This document shows positions 31,815 to 54,225 of a stretch of DNA of 64,000 bases, piece after piece; within the stretch, counting starts at the first letter, position 1; every line of letters begins with the position of its first letter. Below the pieces are notes generated by a model. It was not told where the DNA came from, searched no databases, and worked only from the letters and a program-made list of their open reading frames with translations. Source of the stretch: Podarcis muralis (Eukaryota); assembly GCF_964188315.1 (NCBI RefSeq), contig NC_135667.1:25296001-25360000 (forward strand), read 5' to 3'. The position numbers were made by a program, and so were the translations under genes.

Positions 31815-32735
31815 TCATGAGTTGAGGAATACTTTTCTGAGAGCTGCTTTGACATCCTTATTTCTTAAAGTGTAGACTATAGGATTCAGAGTTGGCGTAA
31901 CCAGTGTGTATAGGGCAGCAACTACCTTGTCTCGCTCAAAGGAGTAGCTGGAGGCTGGTCGTATGTAAGTATAGATGACAGTCGAGTAATATAAGGACAC
32001 AACAATGAGATGTGATGAGCAAGTGGAGAAAGCCTTCTTCTTCCCTTCAGAGGTCCTGATGTTTAAGATTGCCTTAACAATGAAGCAGTAAGATAAGCAT
32101 GTTATTAAGAAGTCCCCCATAGCAAGAAATATGTCTGCTGTGAATACCCAGACTTCATTGATTCTTACTGGGCTGCAGGAGAGAGCCAGAAGTGGAGGAA
32201 TCTCACAGAAGAAGTGATTGATACCATTGGGGCCACAGAAAGTGAGCCGCATAATCAGGCCAGTGTGAACCCATGAGTTTGTAATGGCGATAAGGATCAC
32301 CACTGTGGAGAGTGCTACACATACTGTCTTGTTCATCATGATGCTATAACGCAAGGGGTGGCATATAGCTACATAGCGATCATAAGCCATGACAGTGAAG
32401 AGCACCATCTCAGCTCCCAAACACCACGTGAAGGAATAGAGCTGGGCTATGCAGCCAGAATAGGAGATTCTCTTGCTAAAAGTTGCTATGTTTGTCAGCA
32501 TCTTGGGAATGATGGTGGAAGTGCAGACTATATCCACCACAGCCAAATGGAACAGGAAGAAATACATGGGTGTGTGAAGTTTGGGATAAGAAAAGATGGC
32601 AGCAATGATTGCTGCATTTCCGATCAGGGCAACGATATAAATGGAAAGGAAGAGAATGAAGAGGAAGATCTGCAGCTTGGGATGCTCAGAGAGGCCCATC
32701 ATCATGAATGCGGTCACACAGCTCCTGTTCCTTAC
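31815..32735 (-). CDS. OR13G1: Olfactory receptor OR13G1-like; start codon unresolved (GTA where Met is expected; first in-frame ATG at 32705)
   Basis: Long segments match my recollection of mammalian OR13G1: GAEMVLF, TNSWVHT.LIMRLTFCGPN, HFFCEIPPLLALSCSPVRINEV, YTYIRPASSY.FERDKVVAALYTLVTPTLNP. No stops or frameshifts in the body. Confidence 0.85.
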   Translation of the reverse strand, partial: VRNRSCVTAFMMMGLSEHPKLQIFLFILFLSIYIVALIGNAAIIAAIFSYPKLHTPMYFFLFHLAVVDIVCTSTIIPKMLTNIATFSKRISYSGCIAQLYSFTWCLGAEMVLFTVMAYDRYVAICHPLRYSIMMNKTVCVALSTVVILIAITNSWVHTGLIMRLTFCGPNGINHFFCEIPPLLALSCSPVRINEVWVFTADIFLAMGDFLITCLSYCFIVKAILNIRTSEGKKKAFSTCSSHLIVVSLYYSTVIYTYIRPASSYSFERDKVVAALYTLVTPTLNPIVYTLRNKDVKAALRKVFLNS

Positions 32736-33837
32736 TGCAACTTGGCCACATGATCTGTTGATGCAAAAGAATGTCCATGATAGCTTCTCTGTAACACAAA
32801 TCAACAACTATGATAAACAAGTGTAGTTAAAGTAATGTTTTATATCAATAGACAGCTGCTTTCCTCCTCCTTTTCTAACAACATTGATTTCACTTCCTTT
32901 AAAGCTAACTGTTATATTGGAACATCTATATTAAAATTTAAGCATTTTGGCACTTCTGTTTTTTAAGCTCACATTTATTATTAAGAGTTCTAGCAGCATG
33001 GAATGGCTAGAAAGCACAACAGCTATCATAAACATTATTGTGATATATCACCAAATAGTAAAATTTCTACAACTCACAATATATTTTAGTGATGTGCTGC
33101 AAGGACTAAGACAAATGATTGCTTCTTATGAAAAGACCAAAAGATAGTATATTTACATGTCATCAAAGTACTGCATTTCCATGCTTGTGTTCTCTTACTC
33201 CTTAGGTTAGTTCTGTTACCATAGAACACAGATAATGCTACAATGCGCTCAGTGGGCGAGAACATGCCAATATGAATGTGTGGAATGATATATAGGTGAC
33301 TACAGAGAGAACAATTCCCAAAGCAACTCCATATTGGACCCTAAAGGAACAATTAAAATTTTAGTTTGTTTATGAAATGACATCACACAAATCCCCCCTT
33401 TCTCTTCAATTTATCATTAAAGTTCCTTGTTAAATTATATTTTATTGCAATAAGGATAACAACCCCTCTGAAGATTCATCAGAACATTGCATCATTTCAT
33501 CCCTGGTGTTCCCCAATCAGAGCAAATGAAATGAATGCAGCTCCTGGGACTGACCTACTCCCAATACTTTGCTCACGTTCTCCCCCCACACCACCCCATA
33601 TCACCATAACAAGTCTCTGATGGTGATGTCTGACCTATTCTACATGGCCAATGTAACATTAGAAAAGTTTTTGTGGCACGTTTTATTTTCTTATCATAAT
33701 GTACTACAAATTTTGAAAAATTGTTTTCTTTTTCTCAATAGGTTAGATAATATCTTTCAATATATTATCATCAAACTCAGCATGAGAGCTCCTGAGGTGG
33801 ATGCCAGGTGCCATTTAGAATCAAGATGGTGGACCAA

Positions 33838-36209: not shown

Positions 36210-36440
36210 GAATGAATAGAACAAATCCTCATCATCTTCCAGGTGCCTCAGAGTTCCTTCTCCCAGTGGCACCATCACTTCAATTAAAGTAAGATTTAAA
36301 GGTAGCAGATAGCTTTCCTCGAAAGCCTGTCTACAATGAGATCAAACCAGTTTTCATCAGACATCCAACTTATAGAAGGCAATTGGCTCCAAGTTATAAA
36401 ATACCAGCAACGATACAAAAGAGCAAATAGGGATGAAGGT
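36210..36440 (+). other. Putative upstream exon of the OR at 37342, ending ATG AAG|GT
   Basis: Homologous to 41840-42093 (tcatcatct.cc...ttctcccagtggcaccatc...atcagacatc...attggctc). ATGAAG at 36433-36438, donor GTAAAT at 36439. Confidence 0.6.
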
Positions 36441-37341
36441 AAATCTTTCATGTTACTTAAGAGTTTCTTCATAATGTAAATTGGTTAATTATTAAAGGAT
36501 AATAAATGACTTGTGTGTTGCCAAACCCCATTTAAAGGGTTTGTCATATGTGGCTTGACATAGTATTTCACATAGCATTTTGCAAGCAATGATTTTTCAC
36601 ACAATCACTTAAATCTCTGAACTCTAACTTCTTGCACAAAAAATGTCAACTCATTTTCAGATACTCACATATATCTATATTTAAGGGCTTTGAAACAGCC
36701 CAGTTGGATATGAATGAGAATATTTTAAAAGTGGATATTTCTGGCTGAGTTATGATGACTGCATGTACGTGTTTTTAAAAGAAGGACACAGAAGATTTGA
36801 ATATAACTATTTTCTGATTAACCAACTCTTAGAGAAGAATTTGAATTATGGAAAACTTTCAAAAACTGGTGGAAAGATTTAGGCAGCCTATTCTTACTAA
36901 TGTTGATATTTACCGAGGATGAATATAAAGATGAAATTGGGTTATTTAGGCCTTATTTATTTATTATTTATTTATTTCAAGGCTTGGCAGTCCATAAGAT
37001 GCTATGGCTAATATTAATACAATTTAGGTTATAAAGATCAACTAACAAGTTATTTAGGCCATAGTAGATGCTGCTCTTTAATGAAAAGACAGCCAATTTA
37101 ATAATGAATGAAAGTATATTGTTAGCCATGAGACTCAAAAGAAGTTATGATTTTTTGTGTGTGTGTGATCTCAAATGAAAGAACAATTGCTTTACAAATA
37201 TTTGCCAGCTGAAGAAAGAAATTGCCAAATCTCTAGTGTGAGTGAGAGAGGGAGAAAGTGAATGGAAAAACTAAGTTTCTATCTGGATAACCAAGTTAAC
37301 ACAATTTGCCTGTCTAGGTCATCTGCATCAGAGATATTGAC

Positions 37342-38286
37342 ATGAAAAACCAGTCTACTGCTATGGAGTTTACACTGGTCAGCCTAAGCAGCTCCTTAGA
37401 ACTACAGACTCTTCTCTTTTGGGTATTTACATTTATCTATGCTACTGCTTTGGCTGGAAACTTCCTGCTCATCTTCACCATATGCAGTTGCAGAAAACTC
37501 CACACACCCATGTATTTCCTACTCATCAACCTGTCCTTAGTGAATGTGTTTTCCATCTCAGTTACAACTCCTAAATTGCTCCAGACTCTTTGGACTCACA
37601 CAAAGACCATTTCCTTTTATGGCTGCATCACACAGGTGTATCTATTCATATGGGCTTTAGGAACAGAGATTTTTCTTCTCTCATTTATGGCTTTTGACCG
37701 TTACGTTGCTATCTGCAATCCTTTGCAGTACACAGTCATTATGAGGAAGGAAGTGTGTTTTGGCATAGCAAGTGGTGTATGGGTTGCTGGAATGGGCAAT
37801 TCTGCCATTCACACTGTACTTGTGCTGCAACTGTCCTTCTGCAACTCCAACATCATCAACCACTTCTTCTGTGATCTTCCTCCACTTCTAGAGCTCGCAA
37901 GCTCTGACACCAGCCTGAACGAGACTATGGCTTTGGTGGCAGATGTGATATTTGGGATTGGAAGTTGTGGGTTAACCTTAATATCCTATTTGTTTATCAT
38001 GAGAGCTATCTTTAGGATTCGTTCCACTGAAGGGAAAAAGAAGGCTTTCTCTACATGTTCCTCACATCTCATTGTAGTCAGTTTTTACTTCTTCTCAATC
38101 ATATACACATATATCCGGCCATCCTCTGACTACTCCCCCGACAAAGACAAATTTGTTTCTCTCCTTTATACAGTGGTACCCCCTGTTGTTAATCCCCTTA
38201 TATATTCACTAAGAAACAAAGATTTTAAAGAAGCACTCAAGACATTTCGTGGAAGAAGCAGGCTGCTTCCAGTACTCCAAGAATGA
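37342..38286 (+). CDS. Olfactory receptor, OR13-related paralogue A (314 aa in main exon)
   Basis: Intact ORF with MKNQS, LHTPMYFLL, MAFDRYVAICNPLQY, KKKAFSTCSSHL and PVVNPLIYSLRNK. The third ECL2 Cys is replaced by Ser. Confidence 0.96.
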   Translation: MKNQSTAMEFTLVSLSSSLELQTLLFWVFTFIYATALAGNFLLIFTICSCRKLHTPMYFLLINLSLVNVFSISVTTPKLLQTLWTHTKTISFYGCITQVYLFIWALGTEIFLLSFMAFDRYVAICNPLQYTVIMRKEVCFGIASGVWVAGMGNSAIHTVLVLQLSFCNSNIINHFFCDLPPLLELASSDTSLNETMALVADVIFGIGSCGLTLISYLFIMRAIFRIRSTEGKKKAFSTCSSHLIVVSFYFFSIIYTYIRPSSDYSPDKDKFVSLLYTVVPPVVNPLIYSLRNKDFKEALKTFRGRSRLLPVLQE

Positions 38287-38784
38287 ACTCCATATCCTTT
38301 TAGAGCAGCATTCTTAAAAATATGTGAACTGAAAGAAAAGGTTGACAACAGGATATTGTTTATGTTTAGCTGACGTAAGATGTTTCAGATGACATATTTT
38401 GTACTTGAGAATCAAACATGGTGCTTAAATAACAAGCATATTTTAGGAAGCAATCTATTTTAGGAAACAACCTAAGTATAAGCTCCCCTGAACTCATTGG
38501 TATTACTGCTAAAAATACAAGTATAGAATGGCAGTATCCCAGTGTATAAACAGCTTCTTTAAAAAAAAAAAAAAGATACAGGGGGTTTCTGAGAGAGAGT
38601 ATACATGTACATCAGTGCACACAATTGGGGAACATGCCTTTTGCACATACATAAGCCTTTCATGTGCCTTAGCCTTATTTAGAACTGCAGAACTCAAGCA
38701 TGGAGGTCTTGGGTAGTTATTGCAGACACAATTCCAATCCACACATTGTGAAATGGTGTCCCATGGAATGTTTGAAATAGTCTA

Positions 38785-39016
38785 CAGTGGTACCTTGGTT
38801 TACAACCATAATCCGTTCTGGAGGTCTGGTTGTAAACCAAAACAGGTTGTAACCCAAGGCATGCTTTCGCCAATGGGTTCTCCCCCCCAAAAAAATTGGT
38901 TGTAATCCAAAAAAATTGGTTGTAATCCCCAAAAAGGGACACACACTTCCAGGTTTGACGTTGTTGTAATCCAAAATGGTTGTAATCCGAAGTGGTTGCA
39001 AACCAAAGTGTCACTG
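38785..39016. mobile_element. Tc1/mariner-type MITE
   Basis: TA|CAGTGGTACC...GTGTCACTG|TA, with internal ggttgtaatcc repeats. Confidence 0.85.
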
Positions 39017-39516
39017 TAATTCCTAATATTCTGCCTGTTTTTGTAACTTGGAACAGTGCATTATATTATCTAAAGTTCAATATATACAGATGATGTTGCT
39101 GGATCTCTTCAAATTGTCTAGTTAGCAATGAATATTAGGAGCACTTTGTGAGTTTGTGAGTTGTAAGACACACATAGTTGTAATTTTAAAAAAATAATAA
39201 TGATGATGAAATGTACAATTGTGTATGGATTTAGGAGTAAAGACAAGAACCACTGTAATTTTCTGTAATTCAATAAAAATATTACTCTTAAAAATGGACG
39301 TATCAGCAGCCAGTTGAAAGTTAATTTTGAATTATATTTAGCCACTGAACCCAGCATGAATATACGTAACTTAAACATATTGTTCCTTAACCTGACAGTG
39401 ACCTTGTTAAATGTGACAATTGAACTGAACTGAAATGATCTGAAATGATATTTGAACTGACTTGAAGTGGAACAAAAACCAAAGGAGTAATGGTTTATCC
39501 CAAACTGCTGAAATAG

Positions 39517-39730
39517 AGAGTATGAACTAGGGATGAAGGGGGAATTCTATTCAGTTTGCATGTAAAGCTGAATCTACCTAATCCAAACTTTCCTAAACAA
39601 CATGCAACCCAAAACACAACCATAATATGGAGAAATATGCATATACTAGATAAAGAGTGCATAAAACGCATATGTTTCTGAACATAGCATACAAAATGTA
39701 TTATATTAGAGAAAATTCTTTGCAAAAGAG
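39517..39730 (+). repeat. AT-rich interspersed repeat (second copy inverted at ~52395-52736)
   Basis: tagggatg...gaattctattcagtttgcatgtaaagctgaat...aacacaacc...aaatatgcatat matches the reverse complement of the 52.4-52.7 kb block. Confidence 0.45.
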
Positions 39731-40034
39731 AGAGAGAGTCTGTAATAGGAAAGAAATGCTTTCAAACATGTATAGTAGGAGTAATCCACAGTAAAAGGTT
39801 GACAATTTTACATAAGAACTTTTTTAAAGACAAATGTGTAGAGCTGATTTTAGGTTTGGAAAAATGGGAAACCCAAAACTACAGAGTAATCCTTTCATAT
39901 TAGACATGGGTGTGTGGCAAGGGCAGGAGCTGTGGGGACAGAAAAGAACAAACAACAACAACAACAAGGTTTAACTTGCTCTTTCAACTATTGGTATAAC
40001 ACAGAAATCAGTGTCATGCCCTCCAGGTTTTGTT

Positions 40035-40423
40035 AGGATGCGGGTGGCTCTGTGGTAAACCACTGAGCCTCTTGGGCTTGCCGATCAGAAGGTCGGTGGT
40101 TCGAATCCCTGCAACAGAGTAAGCTCCTGTTGCTCTGTCCCAGCTCCTGCCAATGTAGCAGTTCGAAAGCACACCCGTGCAAATAGATAAATAGGTACTG
40201 CTGTGGCAGGAAGGTAAACAGTGTTTCCGTGCGCCCTGGTTTCTGTCACAGTGTTCCGTTGTGCCAGAAGTGGTTTAATCCTGCTCGCCACATGCCCCAG
40301 AAAGCTGTCTGTGGACACACACTGGCTACCTCGGCATGGAAGCGAGATGAGCGCCACAACACCATCATCGCCTTTGACTGGATTTAACCCTCCAGGGGTC
40401 CTTTACCTTTTACCTTTACCTTT
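40035..40423 (+). mobile_element. Sauria SINE with 38-bp TSD
   Basis: aggatgcgggtggc head and (TTTACC)n tail. TAACACAGAAATCAGTGTCATGCCCTCCAGGTTTTGTT occurs at 39997-40034 and 40424-40461. Confidence 0.93.
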
Positions 40424-40544
40424 TAACACAGAAATCAGTGTCATGCCCTCCAGGTTTTGTTGGAGTCCAATTCCCAGTTATGATAGCCAATGGTAACAGA
40501 ATATGAAGGGCAGAACATGGGCTGTTCCAGTTTTAACAACAAAT

Positions 40545-41279
40545 TGTCAGGAATGAGCTAGCTCCGAGTGAATGTTTGCAGCCAACAGCAGAAAGCAGCC
40601 AGGAACAGAGAGACTAAGATGTTAGTCAGGCAGGGAAGAGCCAGGGAGTTGCAGACTTCATCTCTTCCTGACCGTGACAGGCTGGCTGATAAGGCAGTGC
40701 AGTGGTACCTCGGGTTAAGAACTTAATTCGTTCTGGAGGTCCGTTCTTAACCTGAAACTGTTCTTAACCTGAGGTACCACTTTAGCTTATGGGACCTCCT
40801 GCTGCCGCCACACAATTTGTGTTCTCATCCTGAAGCAAAGTTCTTAACCCGAGGTACTATTTCTGGGTTAGCGGAGTCTGTAACCTGAAGCGTCTGTAAC
40901 CTGAAGTGTCTGTAACCTAAGGTACCACTGTAGCTGAGAGCAGGCTAGAACACAGGCCAAAGCTCACAGGAAGCACAAAACAGCGCAAAAAAACTCAGAG
41001 ACAGCCTCTCTGAAAAGGAAGAGGTTGGAGCTGATCCAATAAGTCCACACAGTCAGTGAATGGGAGGGCTGCTAGACAAGAAGCAAAACAAGAGATGTAA
41101 GGTACGAAAGTTCAATATATTCTGTAGACACTGGAAGGAGTCTTCAGAAGAGTCATCTTGAGTAATGATTCTGGAAGCTTTGTTAGAGCCATCTGGAGCT
41201 GTTTGTTTTGCAATAAAGTCTCCTTTTTAAATTATCTACACTTACTGTGTTAGCAAGCTGGAAACCTGGACTCCTAACA
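40545..41279 (+). mobile_element. Solo LTR with 5-bp TSD, interrupted by a MITE
   Basis: TGTCAGG...CCTAACA termini; CAAAT at 40540-40544 and 41280-41284; AATAAA near 41212. Confidence 0.85.
40700..40930. mobile_element. Tc1/mariner-type MITE nested in the LTR
   Basis: CAGTGGTACC...GGTACCACTG|TA; near-identical to the reverse complement of 48772-49012. Confidence 0.9.
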
Positions 41280-41839
41280 CAAATGAATTTTGTTTTCCTT
41301 CAACCAAAGAGCTGCAGTGTTTCAGGTGTTTACAATACTAGCTAGATGACTGCAATTGCTCTTCCCTGTTCCTGGTTCTTGTATTCGTTTATCTTGAAAA
41401 TAAAAATGTTTAGGGGTACACAAAATAATATGCACAAAATATAATGCTGCAACTGCAAAACAGCATACAAATTAATTCACCAAAATACTTTCCTTGACAT
41501 GCACATATTTTAAATATAGTTGTTTATTTCATTCATATATTACATGTGTATATATATTATGTCACCTTTACCTTATAATATTTCCAGGCAAAGACTTTTT
41601 GGTAGTGTTCATAGAAAAACCCAATTATATTAGGGTTGCATCATCTCACAAAAACAATAACTTTATTTGTAGAAATAGTAGTGGCATGATTCACCCAAGG
41701 TTAAGCACACTCATATTAATTTAAATTCAGTGGGAATGTGAATTTCGCCTCAGGTTTCTAAAAGTTGAATGATAGGAAGTGAATTTGACAAGTGTGCTAA
41801 ACATGGAAATGATGCAAATGTACATGTGCAATTATTTTG

Positions 41840-42093
41840 GCAACAGAATTAATCATCATCTCCCGGATGATACCTCAAATGTCTTTCTCCCAGTGGCACC
41901 ATCTCATCACTTAAAAAAATATTTAGCGCTGGTTACTAGCTTTGTCTGGATAGTATGCCTACGATGATATCAAACTGGTTATTATCAGACATCAGGTTGA
42001 TAGGAGGATATTGGCTCTACATTATAAGAAGGGGAAATAAATGAACAAATGAATAATAGGAACAAACAAGCAAATGCAAAAACATATGAAGGT
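41840..42093 (+). other. Putative upstream exon of the OR at 44544, ending ATG AAG|GT
   Basis: Paralogous to 36210-36440. ATGAAG at 42086-42091, donor GTAAAT at 42092. Confidence 0.6.
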
Positions 42094-42129
42094 AAATATT
42101 TGATTTCATCTAACTATTTCCTCTGAACC

Positions 42130-42600
42130 TAAATCGGCTGCATAAAATCAGGAGCATGAAAAACCCCTGGTACATGCGCCTGCTCCAAAAGGTTTCAGCT
42201 AGAGTCAAAGAATATATGTACAAAGTAGTGCTCCAATGATATTATTCATTGGTCAAGTTTGGAAAGATAAACTGAAAGCTGTTTATTAAGTTCTGGATGG
42301 TATGTTGCAGGCTGGGCATATATTATTCACATGTGGGGGTCTTGCCCAATAATGGCAGCAGTTTGGACTCCCATTTTCCAAAAATTCTCAGCAATTGTAC
42401 TACAGATTATCCCTCCCTCCAGAACTAACATTGGCACTGCTGTTGATTTCTCTAATGGAAATGAAGCCATTGATTTACAAAGAGCTCATTCTCGTTCTAA
42501 TGCCAGCTGCTATGTTAGAAATCTCCCATAATTGGTCCTCTCATTCTCTTCTAACATTAGAACGTTGGTGGAATAAAGTGTGACTCTTTGGTGAGAGGGA
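42130..42600 (+). mobile_element. L1/Tx1-like ORF2 3' remnant
   Basis: HMWGSCP (CCHC knuckle-like HMWWxCP) and LMPAAMLEISHNW...RWWNKV (AA..I...W....W..KV motif). Confidence 0.6.
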
Positions 42601-43513
42601 GCATTAACCGCATCATCAGTGACTGTGCAGGAAAATATCTGGAGCTTATTAGTTCAAAGGAAACATGGTGGCCACTTTTGGTGACCAGTAATAGGCCAAT
42701 TTGACCTTCAGATGTGCAATTCTGATTCTGAAGACATTCAGTTCAAGCATAGGATCACCCATGATGCTAGGTTTACCTGATAACATGTTTTCAGGCATTC
42801 TGTGCTCCTCTCTAATAATTACATCGTATTACCAAGAAGTTGCAGCCCTACTGTAGTTTTCTTGTTTCTATTCTCTATTGTTAGTGTTTTGTCTTTTTTA
42901 ATGTAATTCTTCAGCTAATTTTGGGTGGGGAAGAAATAAATACACAATAAATACATATAAATAAGAAACTGTTGTGCTTTGATAAACCCCTTTCAAACCA
43001 CTTTTTAAGGGGTTGTAAAATGAGGCTTTATATAGTATTATATTTTGATATGTATTTCATGTGCAGTGTCATGGAATGTGCCACCAAGATTGTCTGCTGG
43101 GTAATGTAACACTGAGGCTGAAAGAAATTTCATTAAGAGTAGAAATATGATTGTGAGTATGTCAGTCTCTGCTCAGGTACTGGTGGTTAAAAACTGTATT
43201 TGAAAGGAGAGATGGGGGAGCACCCTTCTTTAAAAGAGTGGCAAAGTAAATTACAGCACAGTAAATTATTAATACATAAAATAAGATATAAGCTTATTCT
43301 ATGAATGAATATGCCTCACCCCCAAAAAATGATTGGAACAGCAGGGCAAGTTTAACAAGAACAGAAATAATAAGAGTTGATATTTGAATGATAGAAATGA
43401 GGTGTTAGAAGTTGTATAACTGGATTTAATTAAACCACAATTGGATTATATCAATTCAAATTAAATGATGAAGAATAATAAATACATGATTTTTTGTCAA
43501 TAAGGAATAAAAT

Positions 43514-43587
43514 ATCAAACAATAATCAAACACAAATCATCAAATAGTCATTTAAATTTGATGATTTGTGTTTGATTATTGTTTGAT
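43514..43587. repeat. Perfect inverted repeat: 32-bp arms, 10-nt loop
   Basis: ATCAAACAATAATCAAACACAAATCATCAAAT (43514-43545), spacer AGTCATTTAA, exact reverse complement at 43556-43587. Confidence 0.95.
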
Positions 43588-44543
43588 TAAAGTATGAAGT
43601 ATAAAGTATCTCTCTTATTGAATGCATTTTTGTGTTGTTTATTTCACTAGTAAAACTTCCTTTTTAGTATAATTTTTAAAAATGCAACATCTCACAAAAC
43701 TGGTTTAACCAGATATCATGGTGAAATTAGTATATCCTTTATGAACAAAGATCCATGATATCACCCTAAACAGCACAATCTGATGGAAGTTTTCTTGGAT
43801 GAAAGCCTCACTATGTTCATTGGGCCTTGCTCCCTACAGAGCTGATGGGCACAAACAATTGTGCATGGTGAATTAGCCCTTGTCAGACTTTGCATCTGTA
43901 TCTGCAATCACAGGATCCTCCACCTGACTACATCCCCCTGAGTGGACTGATACATCTACCTATACAAATCCTGCAGCATTGCAGCAATACATTTCCACTC
44001 AGATATAGTTAATTAACCAGCTTAAGTATGAACAAAATGGCCACAGAGACCTTTTAAAAAGGAGGGAATAATCAGCATGTCTCAACAAATGTTGACAATT
44101 AACAAAAACTGATATAAACGAGGGTAAGCATTGTGTCATTTACTGAAACTACTTGGTGGTTCTCATCCTCACTAGGTAATACAAATGTCAGCAATTACTG
44201 CTAGCAGTGTTCTTTTTGAAAATTCCTGCATTTTCCTAAGCAGTGGCCATCTTTTGTGTGTGTGTTTTGGGGTTGCAGTGGGAAGTATTGTTTTAGTAAT
44301 GTTCAATGTCAATGAGACTATTTTCTGAGTATAGTGCAAGGGATAACTTCAGAGTCCACATTTTCTATGATGACAGACTAGCTTGCCACAATCTTAAAAA
44401 TGACTAGTGAAGTCAAATAAGGGCCAATTTTCTCCTTTTGGCACAAAAAGAGAGAAAGAAGGATGGTGTATGTATAAATTTGGATCATTAATTCTACTTA
44501 ATATAATTTATCTGTTTAGGACACCAGTGCCACAGTTCTTGAA

Positions 44544-45488
44544 ATGAAGAACCAGTCGGTTACTATGGAATTTATATTGGTTGGTCTGATCAGCTCCTCA
44601 GAACTCCAGACTTTTCTCTTTGGGTTATTCACATTCATATATGTTATTGCTTTAGGCAGTAATTTCCTCCTAATCTTTACCATATGCTCTTGCCGAAAAC
44701 TCCACTCTCCCATGTATTTCCTGCTTGTTAACCTGTCCTTAGTGAATGTGTTTTCCATCTCTGTTACAATTCCTAAATTGCTTCAGACTCTTTGGACCCA
44801 TGCAAACAGCATCTCCTTTTATGGTTGCATCACACAGGTGTATCTATTCTTATGGGCTTTGGGTACAGAGCTTTTCCTTCTGTCATTTATGGCTTTTGAC
44901 CGCTATGCTGCTATCTGCCATCCCTTGCAGTACACAGTCATTATGAAGAAGGAAGTATGTGTTGGAATAGCAAGTGGAGTGTGGGTTGCTGGAATGGTCA
45001 ACTCTGCTGTTCACGTTGGACTCATGCTGAAACTCTCCTTTTGCAGCTCTAACATCATCAACCATTTCTTCTGTGATGTTCCTCCACTTTTAAAGCTCTC
45101 CTGCTCTGACACTAGTCTGAATGAGACTATGGCTTTTGTGGCAGATGTGATTTTTGGGATTTGTAGCTGTGGGTTGACTCTAACATCATACTCATTTATC
45201 ATAAGAAGTATCCTCAGAATTCGTTCCACTGAAGGGAAGAAAAAGGCTTTTTCTACATGCTCCTCACATCTCATTGTAGTCATTTTTTACTTCTCCTCAG
45301 TCATCTACGCATATATCAGGCCCACCTCTGACTCCTCTCTAGACCAAGACAAATTTGTTTCTCTCCTTTATACAGTGGTAACTCCAGTTGTTAATCCAAT
45401 CATATACTCACTGAGAAACAAAGATTTCAAAGATGCATTCAAAACAATTACTGCAAGAGGAAGGCTGTTTCAAATTTCTCAAGGTTGA
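44544..45488 (+). CDS. Olfactory receptor, OR13-related paralogue B (314 aa in main exon)
   Basis: Intact ORF closely similar to 37342: MKNQS, LHSPMYFLL, MAFDRYAAICHPLQY, KKKAFSTCSSHL and PVVNPIIYSLRNK. Confidence 0.97.
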   Translation: MKNQSVTMEFILVGLISSSELQTFLFGLFTFIYVIALGSNFLLIFTICSCRKLHSPMYFLLVNLSLVNVFSISVTIPKLLQTLWTHANSISFYGCITQVYLFLWALGTELFLLSFMAFDRYAAICHPLQYTVIMKKEVCVGIASGVWVAGMVNSAVHVGLMLKLSFCSSNIINHFFCDVPPLLKLSCSDTSLNETMAFVADVIFGICSCGLTLTSYSFIIRSILRIRSTEGKKKAFSTCSSHLIVVIFYFSSVIYAYIRPTSDSSLDQDKFVSLLYTVVTPVVNPIIYSLRNKDFKDAFKTITARGRLFQISQG

Positions 45489-46189
45489 TTGATGTACATA
45501 CATTTATTATAAAGACTACTGGAACACTGGAAACAGTAAACTGTTTGATTTCTTTATGCATAGTCAAATATGCTCCAGTTCTTCAGAACACGATTGCGGA
45601 AGTTTCATGATTCTCTCTCTAATAGATAATAGATTTCATTAAAAATACATAAAAGTTAACACCAAAATCATCCTTTTCACCACTAGGATGGTTTTTGAAG
45701 AGGAAACTCTGTGATTTCATAGATAGAGGAGTCCTTCACAAGTGCATTAACAGGCAATGATATTATTGTAGGAATTGGTTTCTCCTCAATGTCATAGCTA
45801 AAAGCCTGCATCTATATTTACCGTGTTCCTTCTCAAGTAGGGGTCCTTTGAATGCTCTCAGACACCAACCTGCTATATTTTGTTCATCATTCTTTATTGT
45901 CATCTAAACTTATTTCTCACCATATTGGAGAATAATCTTTCTTTTTCGCAAACAGAAGATTATAGAGAAGCCAGAGCGAGTCAAATATTAAAGCTAAACA
46001 TGTTTTCCCGCATCTTTCCCACCACTGTTTCCAAGCCCATATGCCCTTCCTTATTCACACATTATGGAGAAACAGAGTTGAGTGTCACCAACATACGGAC
46101 AGTATGATAGTATTTTGAAACACACCACTAAACTGCTGCTTTAGGAGGCCTCGTATCAATGTTAAATAGCACTGGAGATAAAAATGGTG

Positions 46190-46400
46190 CCCTGTTGGGG
46201 CAGACAAGATGAACATCAAAGCCTTGCAAAAGGTGCCCCCCTCACCACATTAAGCGAAAGTGGGGGTGTTCTGGCATGTGGCATTGCCACTTGTCTTCCC
46301 TGCTGCTTGATTAGGTAATAGTGATGAGGTGGGATGCAGCAATAGGAATAGGCCGGGCAAGAGGTGGCTCATGGTGGATTGCCTGATCAGGAGAGGAAGG
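46190..46400 (-). repeat. Unclassified interspersed repeat fragment (second copy at ~48130-48315)
   Basis: Shared block gttctggcatgtggcattgccacttgtcttccct...gtaatagtgatg...ggccgggca.gaggtggctc.tggtggatt. Confidence 0.7.
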
Positions 46401-46563
46401 AAGCCCGACTATTTGATCAGTTTCCTCCCCAAATTGTCCCCTCTTATTTTAGTAGTAGAAGCTTTGCTAGTTGCTTGTTTCAGTGTTGAGTAGTAGTTCT
46501 GCAGGAAGGCCCTCATTGCTTTTGAGACTCCTCTCCACCACCTCTTTCCTACTGTTATGCATG

Positions 46564-46891
46564 GAAGAAGAAGAAGAAGAAGAAGAAGAAGAAGAAGAAG
46601 AAGAAGAAGAAGAAGAAGAAGAGGAGGAGGAGGAGGAGGAGGAGGAGGAGTTGGAGTTTGGATTTGATATCCTGCTTTATCACTCCCCGAAGGAGTCTCA
46701 AAGCGGCTAACATTCTCCTTTCCCTTCCTCCCCCACAACAAACATTCTGTGAGGTGAGTGGGGCTGAGAGACTTCAGAGAAGTGTGACTAGCCCAAGCTC
46801 ATCCAGCAGCTGCATGTGGAGGAGCAGGGAAGCGAACCCAGTTCACCAGATTACGAGTCCACCGCTCCTAACCACCACACCACACTGGCTC
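46564..46891 (-). mobile_element. tRNA-derived SINE (Squam3-like) with (CTC)10(CTT)19 tail
   Basis: Minus-strand head gagccagtgtggtgtggtggttaggagcggtggactcgtaatctgg; 3' ttagccgctttgagactcc. Tail reads (GAA)19(GAG)10 at 46564-46650 on the plus strand. Confidence 0.8.
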
Positions 46892-47864
46892 AATGGAGTT
46901 AATGGGATTGGTTTAATTGGGCTTTCCAGGCTGGAAATATAAGATCTTTTGGGGAAATAAGGGCACTCTGTGGGAATCTTACATTGTTTTGTCCTTCAGG
47001 ACCCTGGAGGGCCTTTTAAGCTTGGCATGCACACCACGGTAAAAGCTGAACCCATAAGTCCATGATGCACTTAACAGGTTCAGGTTGGAGAAAGGATTCA
47101 TTCCAGTCTTTTGTGATGAGGCTAATGATGGTAATTGCACTCTAGACCCAGAGAATGGAGGGAGTTATCCCTTGTGTTTTAGGGAAATTTATTTCAATTG
47201 GTTGTTTTTGCATATCTTCTTTACTGTTTTATTTTGAATAAATATGACCAATTTTCACCATAGTCTGGCTAATGAGTCTTTTTCCAGGGTGTGATGGCAA
47301 AGGAAAAAATGCCAAAAGCTTTAAAAAGCATATTTCAGTATATGCATATATTTCATACATTGAGATTTGTGTGCTTATGAACAATAATACATTAGCTATA
47401 TATGATGTTTCTGGGTTTTCTTTACCGGTAATTCTTCAACTAACATATAAGTAAAACAATACAACAGAGAGAAGTGGAGGTGTATCACAATTCCTTCAGG
47501 CTCACATTTCCCTCTTATGCACATGCCTGAGGATCAGGGCCTTTGGAGGATCTGCAGAGCTTTTAGTTCAGTGGACTCCACCTGCCAGCACCATAGCTGT
47601 CAACTTGCAAGGAATCCTATTTGGAAGAAGGTCATTTCCCTTAAAAAAAGGAAAACGTTGACAGTTATGGCCAGCACCCTGTCCCTGAAAAACTCGCTTT
47701 CTGCCTGCCACTGCCAGTGGAGACATTTCCAGCAAGAACATTTTGCCATCTTGGGTCCCCACTGATATTGTTCAGTGCAGGCAGGCACCAGTGCAGAATC
47801 ATAACTTGAGTTGATTGGAAGTAAAGGTGGTGCAGAAATGTAATAAACAAACAAACAATTTAAC

Positions 47865-48320
47865 TTCTATACCACTCTATATTCTTAAAAAAAAAAAAAA
47901 ACACCTCAAAGCGGTTTACAGCATATTAAATCAATAAAACAACAGGTAGGTAATGTTCCTCCAGCTTCATGAGGAGCCTCATACTAGGGCTGGTGAGTAT
48001 GGGCCTCGCCCCCCAGGCCAGGTGGAAAGGGTCTTGTAGGGAGCTTCCTTCACACTCATAGCTCTGCGATGTTCCTCTGGCCTCATGAGGAGTCTCTTCC
48101 ATAGGGCTGCTGAGTCTGGGCCCTGCTGGAGCAGACAAGATGAGCATCCAAGCCTTGGATTACATGCCCCCCCTCTCACCAAGTTCAGCAAAAGTGGGAC
48201 TGTTCTGGCATGTGGCATTGCCACTTGTCTTCCCTCCTCCTTGATGAGGTAATAGTGATGGGCTGGGATGTAGCAACAGGCCGGGCAGGAGGTGGCTCCT
48301 GGTGGATTACACAACCAGGA
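47865..48320 (-). mobile_element. Retroelement 3' end (L2-like tail), same family as the 46190 fragment
   Basis: Minus strand has gtaaaccgctttgaggtg...gagtggtatagaag, a typical LINE/SINE 3' terminus, joined to the shared repeat block. Confidence 0.5.
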
Positions 48321-48332
48321 GAAGAAGAAATA

Positions 48333-48470
48333 GTTGCTTCTGCCATTCACCCTTTACTTCTGCTACATCTGTCCTACTGCAATTCTAACACCATCAATCA
48401 TTTTTTTCTGTGAATTTTAAAGCTGTCATGCTCCAACATTAGCCTGAATGAAATTGTGGCTATTTTTGTT
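48333..48470 (+). pseudogene. OR13-related pseudogene remnant (TM4 end, ECL2, start of TM5)
   Basis: Reads VASAIHPLLLLHLSYCNSNTINHFF/CE---/KLSCSNISLNEIVAIFV with a +1 T frameshift and a ~10-bp deletion. Aligns to the NSAIHT...LSFCNSNIINHFFC...LSCSDTSLNE segment of neighbouring genes. Confidence 0.85.
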
Positions 48471-48474
48471 TGTT

Positions 48475-49200
48475 TGGTTTTCCCCCAAGTGAAATTACAA
48501 CAAAAATTACAAACATAAAATCCAAAAAAGGGAAAAAATGAAACAAAAAGAACAAAAAACAAACCTACAAAAACCCCATACCATCTTTATGTACAAACTT
48601 TATATACATATACACATACACATTGACTTCCTTCCTGTTTCGAGACCTCATAATTTTTAATCTTTCTGAATTGTTGTGTCTAATGTAAATTATGTCTATC
48701 TTTATACCTTTTGCACAATTTTTTTCAATTTCTTTCACCCTACAAAGCTTCATTCATTACATACCGATATACAGTGGTACCTTGGGTTACAGACGCTTCA
48801 GGTTACAGACGCTTCAGGTTACAGACTCTACTAACCCAGAAATAGTACCTTGGATTAAGAACTTTGCTTCAGGATGAGAACAGAAATCGTGCTCCGGTGG
48901 CATGGCAGCAGCGGGAGGCCCCATTAGCTAAAGTGGTACCTCAGGTTAAGAACAGTTTCAGTTAAGAATGGACCTCCAGAACGAATTAAGTTCTTAACCT
49001 AAGGTACCACTGTACTGACTCCAGAACAATGTTTTTTCATGTATTCTTTGACACAGTCCCATTCTTTTGCTAAATTTTGGTCTGATTGTCCCCTTCAGAA
49101 TCCTGTAAATGCTGCCAAATTTATTTATTCACAAAGTTTAATTTGCCATTCTTTTGTTGATGGGATTTCCCCCCCTTTTCAGTTTTATTCCTTCTGGTGG
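48475..49200 (-). mobile_element. L1 3' end (ORF2 C-terminus and 3' UTR), interrupted by a MITE
   Basis: Minus translation GEIPSTKEWQIKLCE*INLAAFTGF*RGQSDQNLAKEWDCVKEYMKK resembles squamate L1 ORF2 C-termini. Confidence 0.75.
48772..49012. mobile_element. Tc1/mariner-type MITE
   Basis: TA|CAGTGGTACC...GGTACCACTG|TA. Confidence 0.92.
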
Positions 49201-49818
49201 TCCCTTGGGGCCAGGGGGTCTCCGCCTCAGGACACAAATAATAGTTAAAATATATTTGGCAGCAGTAAACTGCTGAATTTGTTAATGTGCACTAAAGTAC
49301 ACTTCATATGGTTAGGAATCAACTGTGGAACATAAAACTCAGACTTCCCTAATTCTGTACGCATACAACACAGCTTATCGTTCTGTGCAAGTGATGTTTA
49401 AAACCTTCACTGTGATCACTAGAAGGCAATGTATATGAGGCCACATGTTTGCTGGACGAGCATGTGGATTCTGACATATATCTCCTAACAGATATTTCAA
49501 GTTCTTGGTAATGCAGGTTTAAATTATTTAATTGTGTCTATGTCTATATAAGCTGTTTTCTAATTTACTGATTAACCTGTCTTCCATCTATTAGTGATTG
49601 AATTTAACAATATGCACTCTATTGGCTCCAACTTTTGGATGATGAAGGTGTGAAGTAAGGAGCCCCCTTCCCCACAGACATGGCAAACATTTATGCTCAA
49701 TGAGATGGAGGGCTAAGAAGGAGAGTAGTGTGGGTTATATGCTCAACTCTAAATAATGCATGAAAGGGGTTAAGACCTTAAATTAAGCTGTCTGGCCAGG
49801 CTTAGCTAGGTCACACAC

Positions 49819-50305
49819 TGTGGCGTTTGCCTCCTAGGTGGGTCATAAGGAAAGGGTTAAATGAGTGTGATGTGATTGGCCAGTGGGAGCCCAAGGGGAG
49901 GAGTTAGAGTTAGAGTTGGAGTGGTTGAAAAGTCAGTTGAGAGTTGGGAGTTGGAGAAGGAAGAGGGAGGATAAGTCTGTGGGTTGGTCGAGTTGTGTTG
50001 TGAGAGAGTGAGAGAAACTGTTAGGTGGAGTCAGATGGATAGTTGGGATAATCAGTTTGAAGTTGTTAGGAACATGTAGGTCAGTAAAGAAACTAAGATT
50101 AAGAAACTGCCAAGAAAAATTAACTGAAACCTTAAACTTGTTCATGCTTATAAAAATAAACTTGATTAATTGTTAATGTTAACAACTGTCTGGACTCCGT
50201 GTGTACCCGAGAGAAACGGGTTGGTGGCAGTGAGGAGGCAATCACAGTGGTGGCACAGGGATCAATAGACCGTCAAATGTCCGGGGACCCTGTGTGATCG
50301 CCACA
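49819..50305 (+). mobile_element. Solo LTR (ERV-like), 487 bp
   Basis: Perfect inverted termini TGTGGCG...CGCCACA and AATAAA near 50155. No clean TSD. Confidence 0.6.
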
Positions 50306-50447
50306 CCCCCCCTCACCAAAGTGTCACCAAATTCTTTGTTCTCTCTCTTCTACCATCTGAACCCTAGCAGCGAGGAGATCTAAGCTGAGTACTGCAAGCT
50401 TAAACCCTATGGCCAAAGCAAGGCACCTTTGTGTTCCTATACAAGTA

Positions 50448-51187: not shown

Positions 51188-51189
<2 letters not shown>

Positions 51190-51248
<59 letters not shown>

Positions 51249-51775: not shown

Positions 51776-52394
51776 CCTAACCTAGAGGTTACAAGAGCAT
51801 AGATGAAGTTAGGCTATCCCTGCCCAGATAGGGACACAGCTGTCGTTATGGTTCTCATGAAATCTCAAATGTCTTTTGTTTTTCCCAATGGCATCCACAC
51901 CCTATTTAAGGAAGTATGTGGAGCCCAATTATACATGGTTATGCTTTTGTCAGATGAGCATCAAGGTAATACAATATTGGCTTGCCTAGAAATACATCCA
52001 AAGGATATCAGTAAATCTTTCCAGCCAGCAAATATAGTGAACATGAACACTGATGCATTTCAGGAGAAGACTGTGAAACTTTTCTTCAGAAAAAACTAGA
52101 ATTGAGGTGAGGGTTTGGTCTTTCCTTCTTTGTTTTAGATAGGTTTTGGTTAATTTGGTTGGATTATTTTGATAGCAAATTCTATAGTTATAATGTAATG
52201 AATACAACCTGTTCCCCATCTTTCTTATCTCAAGTCTTCTTGGGTGTGTTGGCAAAACAGGCAATGTAATCATTAACCAAAAATCAGACCAGAAAAGGGT
52301 AAAGTTGTAACTAAGGATGGGGGCACCTGTCAGTTGCAGTTTCTTGTCCCTCTAGTCTTAAATTGAGTTCTCCACATTTCTACATCAGTTTGCT

Positions 52395-52736
52395 TAAAAC
52401 AACAAAACAACTCCTAATGAAAATTTATCATGTATGTGAGAATTTCTCGAAATATACATTATTCTACACAATTCCCCAAATATATGTATTTTGTAAACAT
52501 TTTCCCTTCAAGTAGGGATATTTTTTGTATATTTTCACAAATATATGCATTTGTATGTACACTATATCCCAGTGTATGGATTTTTGTACACATCACTTGG
52601 ATGCAGAATTTCATTGCAAAATCTGGAAAGTGTAGATTTTGAAGAATGGCTGTGTTTGGTTTGTTGTTTCAGGTTTGTTGCAAATTTAAAGGCCAACCTT
52701 TAAATATGAACTGAATTGAATTTCTTCCAAATCCTA
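52395..52736 (-). repeat. AT-rich interspersed repeat (same family as 39517)
   Basis: Ends ctgaattgaatttcttccaaatcctag, the reverse complement of the start of the 39517 block. Confidence 0.45.
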
Positions 52737-53289
52737 GTTCCAATTTAATTTTTTTTCACAACAACATATATACAATAACTGCTCACAAGTAGCCAGAAAT
52801 CACATTAGGACCAGCTGTTTAAAGGTTTTTTTAAAAAAAGGGAATTGCAAATGACACTGGGCCTATTTAAGCTGTCTTGTGTGAGCTTCAGTTGCTCTTT
52901 AGATCCTAGTTTAAATATACAATTCTGCGTATAATAAAACTGCACTATTGTACATACTTAACTTAGATTAAGTCCTATTGAATTTAGTGGGTTTGTTTCT
53001 GAGCAGATGTGCATAGGATTGCACTGTAAGTTCCACTGTGTAGACATCTTGCCTGTGAACAGTATTTGCTGCCTAGCATTATTTTAAAACTTAGCAAGTA
53101 GCCTGTTACTCTTTTTTTTTTATTGCCCTTTACTTAAATGCGAACCATAATTTTCTTCATATGCTATTATTAATAAATCCAACGTGTGGAAAGTTTCCTT
53201 TTCTGAATTAGGCATCTCTCCTATCAACTGGTATGGTCTCTACATAGAGTGATTTATTTGTCTAGGTCTGCAGAGTCACAGTGTTGGAA

Positions 53290-54225
53290 ATGAAGAACCA
53301 TTCTACCATTACAGAGTTCATCCTGGAGGGTCTTTCCAGCTCCCCTGAACATCAGATATTTATATTTTGGGCATTCACCTTCATCTATACAGCAGCATTG
53401 GTAGGCAATGTCCTCATCATCCTTGCCATCTGCACGTGTAGCAAACTCCACACGCCAATGTATTTTCTTCTCATCAATTTGTCTATAATAAATGTGTGTT
53501 CTATTTCTGTTACAGTTCCCAAAATGCTGCAAACTATTTTTGCACCAAGAAAGACAATTGCACTTCCCGGTTGCATTACACAGGTCTTTCTCTTCACCTT
53601 GGCTCTAGGGACTGAGCTCCTGCTCCTTGCATTCATGGCTTTTGACCGCTATGCTGCTATCTGCCATCCTTTCCAGTACTCAAGCATCATGAGGACTGAG
53701 TTTTGCATTGGGGCAATGGCTGGACTGTGGCTGATAGGCTTGGTAAATTCTGCAGTACACACAGGACTGGTAGCACAGCTTTCCTTCTGTAACTCCAACA
53801 TCATCAACCATTTCTTCTGTGAGCTACCACCTATGTTCAAGATCTCTTGCTCAGACACAAGTCTGAATGAAATGATGGTTTTTGCAGCTTCTGTGCTAAT
53901 TGCAATAGGTAGTTGTGCCTTAACATTAACATCGTATGGATTTATCCTAAGAACCATAGTCAAAATCCGCTCAACAGAAGGGAAGAAGAAAGCCTTCTCT
54001 ACATGTTCTTCCCATCTCTTAGTTGTAAGCTTTTACTATTCCACAATTATCTACACTTTCCTTCGGCCTGCCTCAGCCTACTCCTTAGAAGAAGACAAGG
54101 TTATTGCTATCCTTTACTCAGTAGTAACTCCAGTCCTCAATCCACTCATATACTCTCTGAGAAATACTGATGTTAAAGAAGCTCTTGCAAAGCTAGTAGG
54201 CAGAAGGCTCTTCCAGAGAGAGTAG
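53290..54225 (+). CDS. Olfactory receptor, OR13-related paralogue C (311 aa from first ATG)
   Basis: The track ORF starts at GTG 53281; the first ATG is 53290 (MKNHS). Motifs LHTPMYFLL, MAFDRYAAICHP, KKKAFSTCSSHL and PVLNPLIYSLRN are present. Confidence 0.96.
   Translation: MKNHSTITEFILEGLSSSPEHQIFIFWAFTFIYTAALVGNVLIILAICTCSKLHTPMYFLLINLSIINVCSISVTVPKMLQTIFAPRKTIALPGCITQVFLFTLALGTELLLLAFMAFDRYAAICHPFQYSSIMRTEFCIGAMAGLWLIGLVNSAVHTGLVAQLSFCNSNIINHFFCELPPMFKISCSDTSLNEMMVFAASVLIAIGSCALTLTSYGFILRTIVKIRSTEGKKKAFSTCSSHLLVVSFYYSTIIYTFLRPASAYSLEEDKVIAILYSVVTPVLNPLIYSLRNTDVKEALAKLVGRRLFQRE

What the first reader, a model, noticed from the sequence alone, without database searches (positions are those of the whole stretch)
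36433..44546. Split-exon olfactory receptors: paralogous upstream exons end in ATG AAG|GT and splice in frame
Seen: the 5' flanks of ORs 37342 and 44544 share a diverged homology block (~36210-36440 vs ~41840-42093). In both it ends in exactly ATGAAG|GTAAAT (36433-36443 and 42086-42096). In all three OR13-related paralogues the acceptor AG sits exactly 24 nt before the ATG (exons start at 37318, 44520 and 53266), and all three leaders are stop-free and in frame: VICIRDID, DTSATVLE, VCRVTVLE. Phase-0 splicing gives MK-VICIRDID-MKNQS... and MK-DTSATVLE-MKNQS.... Knowledge: ORs are usually treated as single-coding-exon genes, though a minority of mammalian ORs have coding split over two exons. 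Inference: this clade has a conserved 2-codon coding exon end adding a 10-aa extracellular extension that single-exon pipelines would miss. I know of no description in reptiles.
Basis: partly seen in the sequence, partly recalled or inferred. Interest (0 to 1): 0.8.

Follow-up and report, generated by a model that had tools for sequence, protein, structure and literature searches.

The report
Two-exon lizard olfactory receptor genes
Three neighbouring wall-lizard smell-receptor genes keep a tiny upstream exon that ends in a start codon and joins in frame to the main exon; lizards, geckos and snakes share this layout, so it is real and old, but the same kind of gene is already described in mammals.

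Summary
ATGAAG|GTAAAT closes a homologous upstream block before two Podarcis muralis OR13G1-like genes. All three paralogues have a splice acceptor exactly 24 nt before the usual ATG, and the leaders are open and in frame.

Comparison shows this is not chance. The same promoter motif, the same ATG-AAG|GT exon end and the same 24-nt leader occur at DNA level in python, two geckos, Rhineura, a skink, Anolis and other lacertids. Among the 120 closest squamate proteins the "usual" Met is Ile in 50 and Met in only 22, so those genes need the upstream ATG. RefSeq already models many of them as MK + 8 residues + IKNxS.

The third gene has its own upstream exon, which I located at 51954-51965 (MSIK).

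Caveats:
- The one read-mapping call failed, so there is no RNA evidence.
- The leader shows no third-codon-position pattern; only its length and openness are kept.
- Genes that keep the internal ATG sometimes lose the upstream start: P. raffonei gene 1 (1-bp deletion in the ATG), P. raffonei gene 3 (2-bp leader deletion), one Anolis gene and one Tiliqua gene.

The layout is ancestral. Its use in P. muralis is likely but unproven. The kind is known from mammals (Barnes 2020), and this scan has already noted another split OR subfamily in this genome.

The parts
36246..36276 (+). Gene 1: conserved promoter-type motif (contains TTCTCCCAGTGGCACCATC, which resembles an O/E site), 175 nt before the upstream ATG
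   Evidence: 19/19 identical to 41885-41903, none expected by chance. The same motif heads the homologous block in python, geckos, Rhineura, skink and Anolis. The O/E reading is from memory and was not tested.
36433..36438 (+). Gene 1: upstream start ATG plus AAG, the last two codons of exon 1 (the 5' end of the exon is unknown)
   Evidence: ATGAAG is kept in Lacerta and Zootoca gene 1. In P. raffonei it reads AT-AAG.
36439..37317 (+). Gene 1: intron (879 nt), GTAAAT donor and a pyrimidine tract plus TAG acceptor
   Evidence: The RefSeq model XP_053218396.1 of P. raffonei uses exactly the homologous junction.
37318..37341 (+). Gene 1: 24-nt in-frame leader (VICIRDID)
37342..38286 (+). Gene 1: conventional single-exon OR reading frame (314 aa; 324 aa counted from the upstream ATG)
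   Evidence: 100% to A0A670JED4_PODMU; Pfam 7tm_4.
36336..36338 (+). Gene 1: out-of-frame upstream ATG. Its frame runs through the splice junction and stops at TGA 37338-40. It matters only if transcription starts 5' of it.
   Evidence: It becomes in frame in P. raffonei after the 1-bp deletion.
41873..41903 (+). Gene 2: conserved promoter-type motif
42074..42091 (+). Gene 2: end of exon 1 with two in-frame ATGs (42074 and 42086), reading MQKH-MK, then the donor
42092..44519 (+). Gene 2: intron (2428 nt), GTAAAT donor and TTTAG acceptor
44520..44543 (+). Gene 2: 24-nt in-frame leader (DTSATVLE)
44544..45488 (+). Gene 2: conventional OR reading frame (314 aa)
51848..51933 (+). Gene 3: diverged copy of the promoter-type block
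   Evidence: nhmmer E 5.5e-13 with the exon-1 profile; BLAST lead.
51954..51965 (+). Gene 3: probable end of exon 1, ATG AGC ATC AAG followed by GTAATA. The ancestral ATG is now ATC, and a new in-frame ATG lies two codons upstream.
   Evidence: The ATG is kept in four lacertids. This donor is less certain because a RefSeq isoform of P. raffonei reads through it.
51966..53265 (+). Gene 3: inferred intron (1300 nt)
53266..53289 (+). Gene 3: 24-nt in-frame leader (VCRVTVLE)
   Evidence: It is 22 nt long in P. raffonei.
53290..54225 (+). Gene 3: conventional OR reading frame (311 aa from the ATG)

Best explanation
These are two-exon olfactory receptor genes of an OR13G1-like subfamily that is shared by all squamates.

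Shown: a short first exon, downstream of a conserved promoter-type motif, ends in a start codon plus one codon (ATG AAG). It would join in phase 0 to an acceptor that lies 24 nt before the position where single-exon ORs start. In the squamate ancestor both ATGs were present. In many descendants the internal ATG then mutated to Ile, Leu, Thr or Arg codons, which is tolerable only if the upstream ATG is the working start.

Inferred: in P. muralis genes 1 and 2 (and gene 3 with MSIK) both ATGs are intact and in frame. A scanning ribosome should therefore make mainly a receptor with 10 (gene 3: 12) extra extracellular residues ahead of the N-glycosylation site. The 314-aa form would arise as a by-product of leaky scanning. 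The extension itself seems to need only the right length and no stop codon, not a particular sequence.
For: - **Same structure at DNA level elsewhere.** Liasis, two genes: ATGAAG|GTAAAT, acceptor TAG|GT or CAG|GT (one gene each), 24 nt, then ATA. Eublepharis: ATGAAG|GTAAGT, then AGA. Rhineura: ATGAAG|GTAAGT, then ATA. Tiliqua: ATGAAG|GTGA then ACA, and ATGGGC|GTACGT then TTG. Heteronotia and the Anolis gene-3 orthologue: ATGAAG|GTAA with an internal ATG. Lacertid genes 1, 2 and 2b also show it.
- **All six genes with DNA in hand that lack an internal ATG keep an in-frame upstream ATG.**
- **Two conservation islands.** In an alignment of 13 first exons only the promoter motif and the (A)ATAGNAATGAAG|GTAA end are conserved. 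Where the upstream ATG is kept, position -3 is a purine in all aligned genes but P. muralis gene 2, and the region between the islands is full of indels.
- **Leader length and openness.** Of the 25 full genes compared, 23 have a 24-nt leader (the exceptions are P. raffonei gene 3 and gene 4). None of those 23 leaders carries an in-frame stop. Among 15 lineage representatives, stops occur in frame 0, 1 and 2 in 0, 2 and 11 genes.
- **Residue at the 'usual' Met.** Among the 120 closest proteins it is I 50, M 22, L 7, R 6, T 6. Twenty-one models are exactly M-x plus 8 residues. There are at least 12 Met/non-Met changes on the tree.
- **RefSeq junction.** XP_053218396.1 of P. raffonei uses the junction homologous to 36438|37318.
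Against:
- NCBI's own P. muralis models are 314 aa, without the extension.
- The leader shows no third-position excess: diversity 0.41/0.54/0.41 by codon position, against 0.34/0.33/0.57 in the following coding sequence.
- Genes with an internal ATG have lost the upstream start or the frame: P. raffonei gene 1, P. raffonei gene 3, Anolis 10001 and Tiliqua 10001.
- In gene 1 an out-of-frame ATG at 36336 would override the MK start if it is transcribed.
- The gene 2 upstream ATGs have C at position -3.
Confidence: 0.65

Rival explanations
1. In Podarcis the upstream exon now works only as a 5' untranslated exon. The in-frame ATG is a decaying relic of the ancestral start, or a mild translational brake. 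The receptor starts at the internal ATG, as annotated (314 aa).
For: - P. raffonei gene 1 has lost the ATG by a 1-bp deletion.
- P. raffonei gene 3 has a 2-bp leader deletion that breaks the frame.
- Anolis 10001 and Tiliqua 10001, both with an internal ATG, have lost the upstream ATG.
- Gene-3 orthologues in 16 squamates and in turtles are all modelled from the internal ATG.
- The leader evolves about as fast as the intron.
- In-frame upstream ATGs occur in 13.6% of human and 21.5% of mouse OR transcripts without being regarded as starts (PMC7055050).
Against: ATGAAG|GT and the 24-nt open leader are still intact in P. muralis, Lacerta and Zootoca gene 1 and in every gene 2 and 2b copy. They persist although the surrounding first exon has diverged to 73-79% identity. 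A first AUG with G at -3 (gene 1) would normally be used by scanning ribosomes (textbook knowledge, not tested here).
Confidence: 0.3
2. Coincidence: an ordinary non-coding OR leader exon whose splice-donor consensus (AAG|GTAA) happens to follow an ATG in frame, inherited by two recent duplicates.
For: The 12-mer is not significant on its own. Eight codons stay open by chance about two times in three. The two copies are not independent.
Against: The same ATG, phase and 24-nt spacing occur in python, geckos, Rhineura, skink and Anolis, i.e. on both sides of the deepest splits among the squamates sampled. Dozens of relatives have no other start codon.
Confidence: 0.03

Closest known systems
Mammalian 'split' OR genes (Barnes, Ibarra-Soria et al., BMC Genomics 2020; PMC7055050)
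   Same: The start Met lies in an upstream exon and the intron falls in the extracellular N-terminus. Several have an intron after residue 1-3, e.g. Olfr1331, Olfr1333 and Olfr94/OR2I1P after residue 2. Some also have a single-exon isoform from an internal ATG. Introns are of kilobase size. The paralogues listed form families.
   Different: The mammalian cases were defined with RNA-seq; here the evidence is comparative only. No OR13 gene is in their list. Human OR13G1 has its whole CDS in exon 2, which begins 238 nt before the CDS start, so this looks like an independent squamate case.
RefSeq (Gnomon) models of squamate 'olfactory receptor 13G1-like' proteins that start MK plus 8 residues, e.g. 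Liasis olivaceus, Python bivittatus, Candoia, Protobothrops, Eublepharis, Varanus, Rhineura, Tiliqua
   Same: Same subfamily, same two-codon exon and same junction. I verified the DNA for Liasis, Eublepharis, Rhineura and Tiliqua.
   Different: In those genes the usual ATG is absent, so the annotation pipeline had to look upstream. The P. muralis genes keep it and are annotated without the extension.
Ordinary OR gene with a non-coding 5' exon spliced a few bases before the ATG
   Same: A promoter-type motif, a short first exon, a kilobase intron and an acceptor 14-26 nt before the ATG are also seen in the other ORs of this window.
   Different: Those leaders are out of frame or carry stops. 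Here the leader is fixed at 24 nt and open, and the exon ends in an in-frame ATG.
Another P. muralis OR subfamily with a hidden N-terminal exon (scan note s1-184744, about 1.37 Mb further along the same chromosome)
   Same: Same genome and same general layout; that follow-up also placed it as a further example of the mammalian kind.
   Different: It concerns different genes. I did not examine that locus.

Membership tests
Split (two-coding-exon) OR genes in the sense of Barnes et al. 2020 | Intact full-length OR reading frame across the two exons | tested here: met
   MK + VICIRDID + 314 aa, MK + DTSATVLE + 314 aa and MSIK + VCRVTVLE + 311 aa, all without stops.
Split (two-coding-exon) OR genes in the sense of Barnes et al. 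2020 | Start Met and splice junction conserved in orthologues or closest paralogues | tested here: met
   Conserved in lacertids, geckos, python, Rhineura, skink and Anolis. Exceptions: P. raffonei genes 1 and 3, Anolis 10001 and Tiliqua 10001.
Split (two-coding-exon) OR genes in the sense of Barnes et al. 2020 | Transcript (RNA-seq or cDNA) support for the junction | not testable with these tools
The only indirect support is that a RefSeq model of P. raffonei uses the junction.
Split (two-coding-exon) OR genes in the sense of Barnes et al. 2020 | Translation starts at the upstream Met | not testable with these tools
   Inferred for the clade from the repeated loss of the internal ATG. Unknown for P. 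muralis.
Vertebrate class II olfactory receptor (Pfam 7tm_4) | 7tm_4 / 7tm_1 domain, length about 310 aa, N-terminal NxS site | tested here: met
   Precomputed PF13853 and PF00001 on the identical UniProt entry, and on all hits. MKNQS/MKNHS is present.
Non-coding 5' UTR exon with an incidental in-frame uATG | The upstream ATG and the frame are free to decay in relatives | tested here: inconclusive
   The upstream ATG or the frame was lost in 4 gene/species cases, all with an internal ATG. It was never lost in the 6 genes without one.

The most novel reading that the evidence does not exclude
A squamate-wide OR subfamily moved its start codon onto a two-codon mini-exon early in squamate history. 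Since then it has switched repeatedly (at least 12 times) between 'both ATGs' and 'upstream ATG only'. If so, single-exon OR mining would miscount or truncate dozens of intact receptors per snake, gecko or amphisbaenian genome. The short extension might also have a role of its own, for example in membrane insertion or in glycosylation of the N-terminal sequon.
Probability: 0.3. Interest if true: 0.6.

Novelty: new member of a known kind. Interest (0 to 1): 0.45.

Why it matters
OR repertoires of reptiles are usually counted by looking for single-exon reading frames that begin with ATG. In this subfamily most members outside lacertids have Ile, Leu, Thr or Arg at that position. They would be called pseudogenes or be started at an internal Met that lacks the glycosylation site; about 20 of the 120 closest database models do start inside the gene. 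Recognising the conserved ATG-AAG mini-exon corrects those models. It also gives a clean natural experiment on start-codon turnover. For P. muralis itself the practical effect is small: 10 extra, poorly conserved residues on receptors that are otherwise correctly annotated.

Tried and rejected
1. **RNA evidence.** The look-up of sequencing runs listed six raw-read RNA runs of the species. No junction, transcription start or expression data could be obtained.
2. **More copies of the upstream block in the genome.** Only the two known copies exist.
3. **Coding signature in the leader.** The codon-position test gave none. I therefore do not claim selection on the peptide sequence, only on length and openness.
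4. **Turtle outgroup (Trachemys).** The acceptor is again exactly 24 nt before the ATG and the leader is open. No homologous first exon or in-frame ATG-donor was found within 10 kb. The one ATGAAA|GTAA at L047:1603 has no promoter motif and is probably chance. The age beyond squamates remains open.
5. **Fourth paralogue (chromosome C13 at 14.755 Mb).** The usual codon is CTG, a new ATG lies two codons upstream, and the acceptor AG is shifted by 1 nt. It does not fit the 24-nt scheme.
6. **TATA or CCAAT reading of ATTGGCTC...TTATAA before the ATG.** It is conserved only within lacertids, so I dropped it as a way to place the transcription start.
7. **Literature.** I found no paper on split ORs in squamates.
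Full report
**Observation.**
- ATGAAG followed by GTAAAT lies at 36433-36444 and at 42086-42097.
- AG acceptors lie at 37316-17, 44518-19 and 53264-65. Each is preceded by a pyrimidine-rich tract and sits exactly 24 nt before the ATGs at 37342, 44544 and 53290.
- The three leaders translate to VICIRDID, DTSATVLE and VCRVTVLE.
- The two 5' flanks are homologous: 36229-36399 vs 41853-42027, 73% identity, E 5e-22, with a second short segment over the ATGAAGGTAAAT.
- The block exists only twice in the 1.52-Gb assembly.
- Taken alone, the 12-mer is not beyond chance, and eight open codons are unremarkable. The case has to rest on comparison with other species.
- As a local control, the five other ORs of the window that have a canonical ATG carry leaders of 18, 14, 25, 26 and 23 nt. 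Only one of them is in frame and open.

**Identity.** The genome is Podarcis muralis: gene 1 is 100% identical to UniProt A0A670JED4_PODMU. The window is G000:C13:25296001-25360000. The three genes form a small subfamily, 'OR13G1-like' in RefSeq naming. A fourth member sits at C13:14.755 Mb, and the next ORs are only about 50% identical.

**Comparative evidence from proteins.** I sorted the 120 closest database proteins, all squamate, by their N-termini.
- The residue aligned with the Podarcis start Met is Ile in 50, Met in 22, Leu in 7, Arg in 6 and Thr in 6.
- Twenty-one models have exactly ten residues before it, twelve of them beginning MK. Examples are MKVTGIRVAE-IKNHS in Liasis and MKVINARFIE-RTNQS in Eublepharis.
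- The eight-residue leader has a loose consensus, V-T-G/S-I-R-D/V-x-E. Podarcis gene 1 (VICIRDID) still resembles it.
- On a tree of the receptor cores, the Met/non-Met state changes at least 12 times.

**Comparative evidence from DNA.** I fetched the loci behind several of these models.
- In Liasis olivaceus the model starts with ATGAAG|GTAAAT. The next exon begins after TTTCTAG with 24 nt and then ATA AAA AAC CAT TCA. A second gene in the same locus has the same structure, with a CAG acceptor.
- Eublepharis has ATGAAG|GTAAGT, 24 nt, then AGA. Rhineura has ATGAAG|GTAAGT, 24 nt, then ATA.
- Tiliqua has ATGAAG|GTGA with ACA, and ATGGGC|GTACGT with TTG.
- Heteronotia and the Anolis orthologue of gene 3 keep ATGAAG|GTAA together with an internal ATG.
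- All these first exons follow the same promoter-type motif, GATG..CTCAAA.GTCTTTCTCCCAGTGGCAC, about 175-250 nt upstream.
- In a 13-gene alignment only that motif and the (A)ATAGNAATGAAG|GTAA end are conserved. Where the upstream ATG is kept, position -3 is a purine in all aligned genes but P. muralis gene 2. The region between the two islands is riddled with indels.
- Of the 25 full genes compared, 23 have a 24-nt leader. None of those 23 has an in-frame stop. Among 15 lineage representatives, the other two frames carry stops in 2 and 11 genes.
- All six genes with DNA in hand that lack an internal ATG have an in-frame upstream ATG at the exon end.

**The third gene.** A diverged copy of the promoter block lies at 51848-51933. 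In the alignment the ancestral ATGAAG|GTAA corresponds to ATCAAG|GTAATA at 51960-51971. The old ATG is therefore lost, but ATG AGC ATC AAG (51954-51965) supplies a new in-frame ATG two codons upstream. It is kept in P. raffonei, Lacerta and Zootoca, where it reads ATG AGC ACC AAG. This donor is less secure than the other two, because a RefSeq isoform of P. raffonei (XP_053215889.1) reads straight through it.

**History.** Gene-3 orthologues are single-copy in 16 squamates. Their turtle relatives also start at the internal Met, as do all ordinary ORs. Yet the Anolis gene-3 orthologue already has ATGAAG|GTAAAT and an open 24-nt leader. The simplest reading is that the squamate ancestor had both ATGs. 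After the subfamily expanded, the internal ATG was lost many times. Such loss is tolerable only if the upstream ATG was already the working start. A turtle orthologue has the acceptor at exactly -24 with an open leader, but I found no homologous first exon there. Whether the layout is older than squamates stays open.

**What weakens the claim for Podarcis itself.**
- NCBI's P. muralis proteins are 314 aa.
- The leader shows no coding-type substitution pattern: diversity 0.41/0.54/0.41 by codon position, against 0.34/0.33/0.57 just downstream. Only its length and openness look constrained.
- Where an internal ATG exists, the upstream start can decay. In P. raffonei gene 1 the G of the ATG is deleted. 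This brings an ATG homologous to 36336 into frame, and RefSeq duly predicts a 356-aa protein that uses exactly the junction proposed here. In P. raffonei gene 3 the leader is 22 nt. Anolis 10001 reads ATCAAAG|GTACAT and Tiliqua 10001 reads TTGAAT|GTAAGT.
- In P. muralis gene 1 the out-of-frame ATG at 36336 would override the MK start if it lies in the transcript.
- The gene 2 upstream ATGs have a weak context.

**Mechanism.**
- Shown: the conserved exon end, the phase, the acceptor and the open 24-nt leader, and the fact that the upstream ATG is obligatory in many relatives.
- Inferred: the P. muralis transcripts splice 36438 to 37318, 42091 to 44520 and 51965 to 53266. Scanning ribosomes then start mostly at the upstream ATG, giving 324-, 324- and 323-aa receptors. 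Their extra residues sit on the extracellular side ahead of the NxS site, and the internal ATG serves as a second start.
- I put the structural claim at about 0.9, the clade-level start claim at about 0.85, and actual use in P. muralis at about 0.6.

**Comparison with what is known.** Barnes et al. 2020 (PMC7055050) described 13 human and 41 mouse split ORs. Several have an intron after residue 1-3, and several have an additional single-exon isoform. They also report in-frame upstream ATGs in 13.6% of human and 21.5% of mouse OR transcripts. No OR13 gene is on their list, and the exon 2 of human OR13G1 begins 238 nt before its CDS start, so the squamate case appears independent. RefSeq already encodes the MK exon in many squamates. 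I found no paper that describes it.

**Verdict.** The feature is real and old, and it is a new member of a known kind. It is of moderate interest, chiefly for annotating reptile OR repertoires and as a case of start-codon turnover.

Noticed in passing
window 31815-32807 (- strand): This neighbouring OR (about 50% identical to gene 1) has no in-frame ATG at the usual N-terminal position. It reads ...AVRNRSCVTAF-MMMGL after an acceptor-like TTACAG. RefSeq models of its orthologues span up to 10 kb for 309-322 aa, and in P. raffonei the range overlaps gene 1 on the other strand. It is possibly another split OR. The P. raffonei first exon sits in a SINE-like repeat (window 39874-40165) and looks doubtful.
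   Followed up: partly
L041:8590-10951 (P. raffonei) and L039:8560-10951 (Zootoca); window 45500-51800: P. raffonei and Zootoca have a paralogue 'gene 2b' (protein starts MDMKNQS, own ATGAAG|GTAAAT exon, leader ESNIR(E/D)MD). In P. raffonei it sits between genes 2 and 3. The P. muralis window has no such gene. The P. muralis gene 2 coding exon and 3' flank are 94% identical to the P. raffonei 2b region. That suggests a deletion or unequal crossover that fused the two.
   Followed up: partly
L041:10001-13959 (P. raffonei); corresponds to window about 51900-52106: RefSeq isoform XP_053215889.1 (372 aa) splices from the 3' end of the gene 2b coding region into the promoter and first-exon region of gene 3 and reads on to a stop at the next GTGAGG donor. 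This is a read-through transcript model between neighbouring ORs.
   Followed up: no
G000:C13:14754529-14755493 (L036:2030-2994): In the fourth paralogue (RefSeq MELKNQS, 315 aa) the usual codon is CTG, a new ATG lies two codons upstream, and the acceptor AG is shifted 1 nt downstream. A candidate upstream exon (ATG at L036:2030, donor CAG|GTATGT at 2063/2064, phase 1) would again be in frame with the shifted acceptor. This is speculative.
   Followed up: partly
L047:9977-10003 (Trachemys scripta): The turtle relative of gene 3 has its acceptor (GACAG) exactly 24 nt before the ATG, with an open leader (VRSSGDSE). The acceptor position may therefore predate squamates. No matching first exon was found within 10 kb.
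   Followed up: partly
window 36394-36400 and 42024-42030: ATTGGCTC (an inverted CCAAT-like element) followed by TTATAA lies 33-60 nt before the upstream ATG in lacertid genes 1, 2 and 2b. The TTATAA part is not conserved in snakes or geckos. It could mark a lacertid transcription start very close to the ATG.
   Followed up: no
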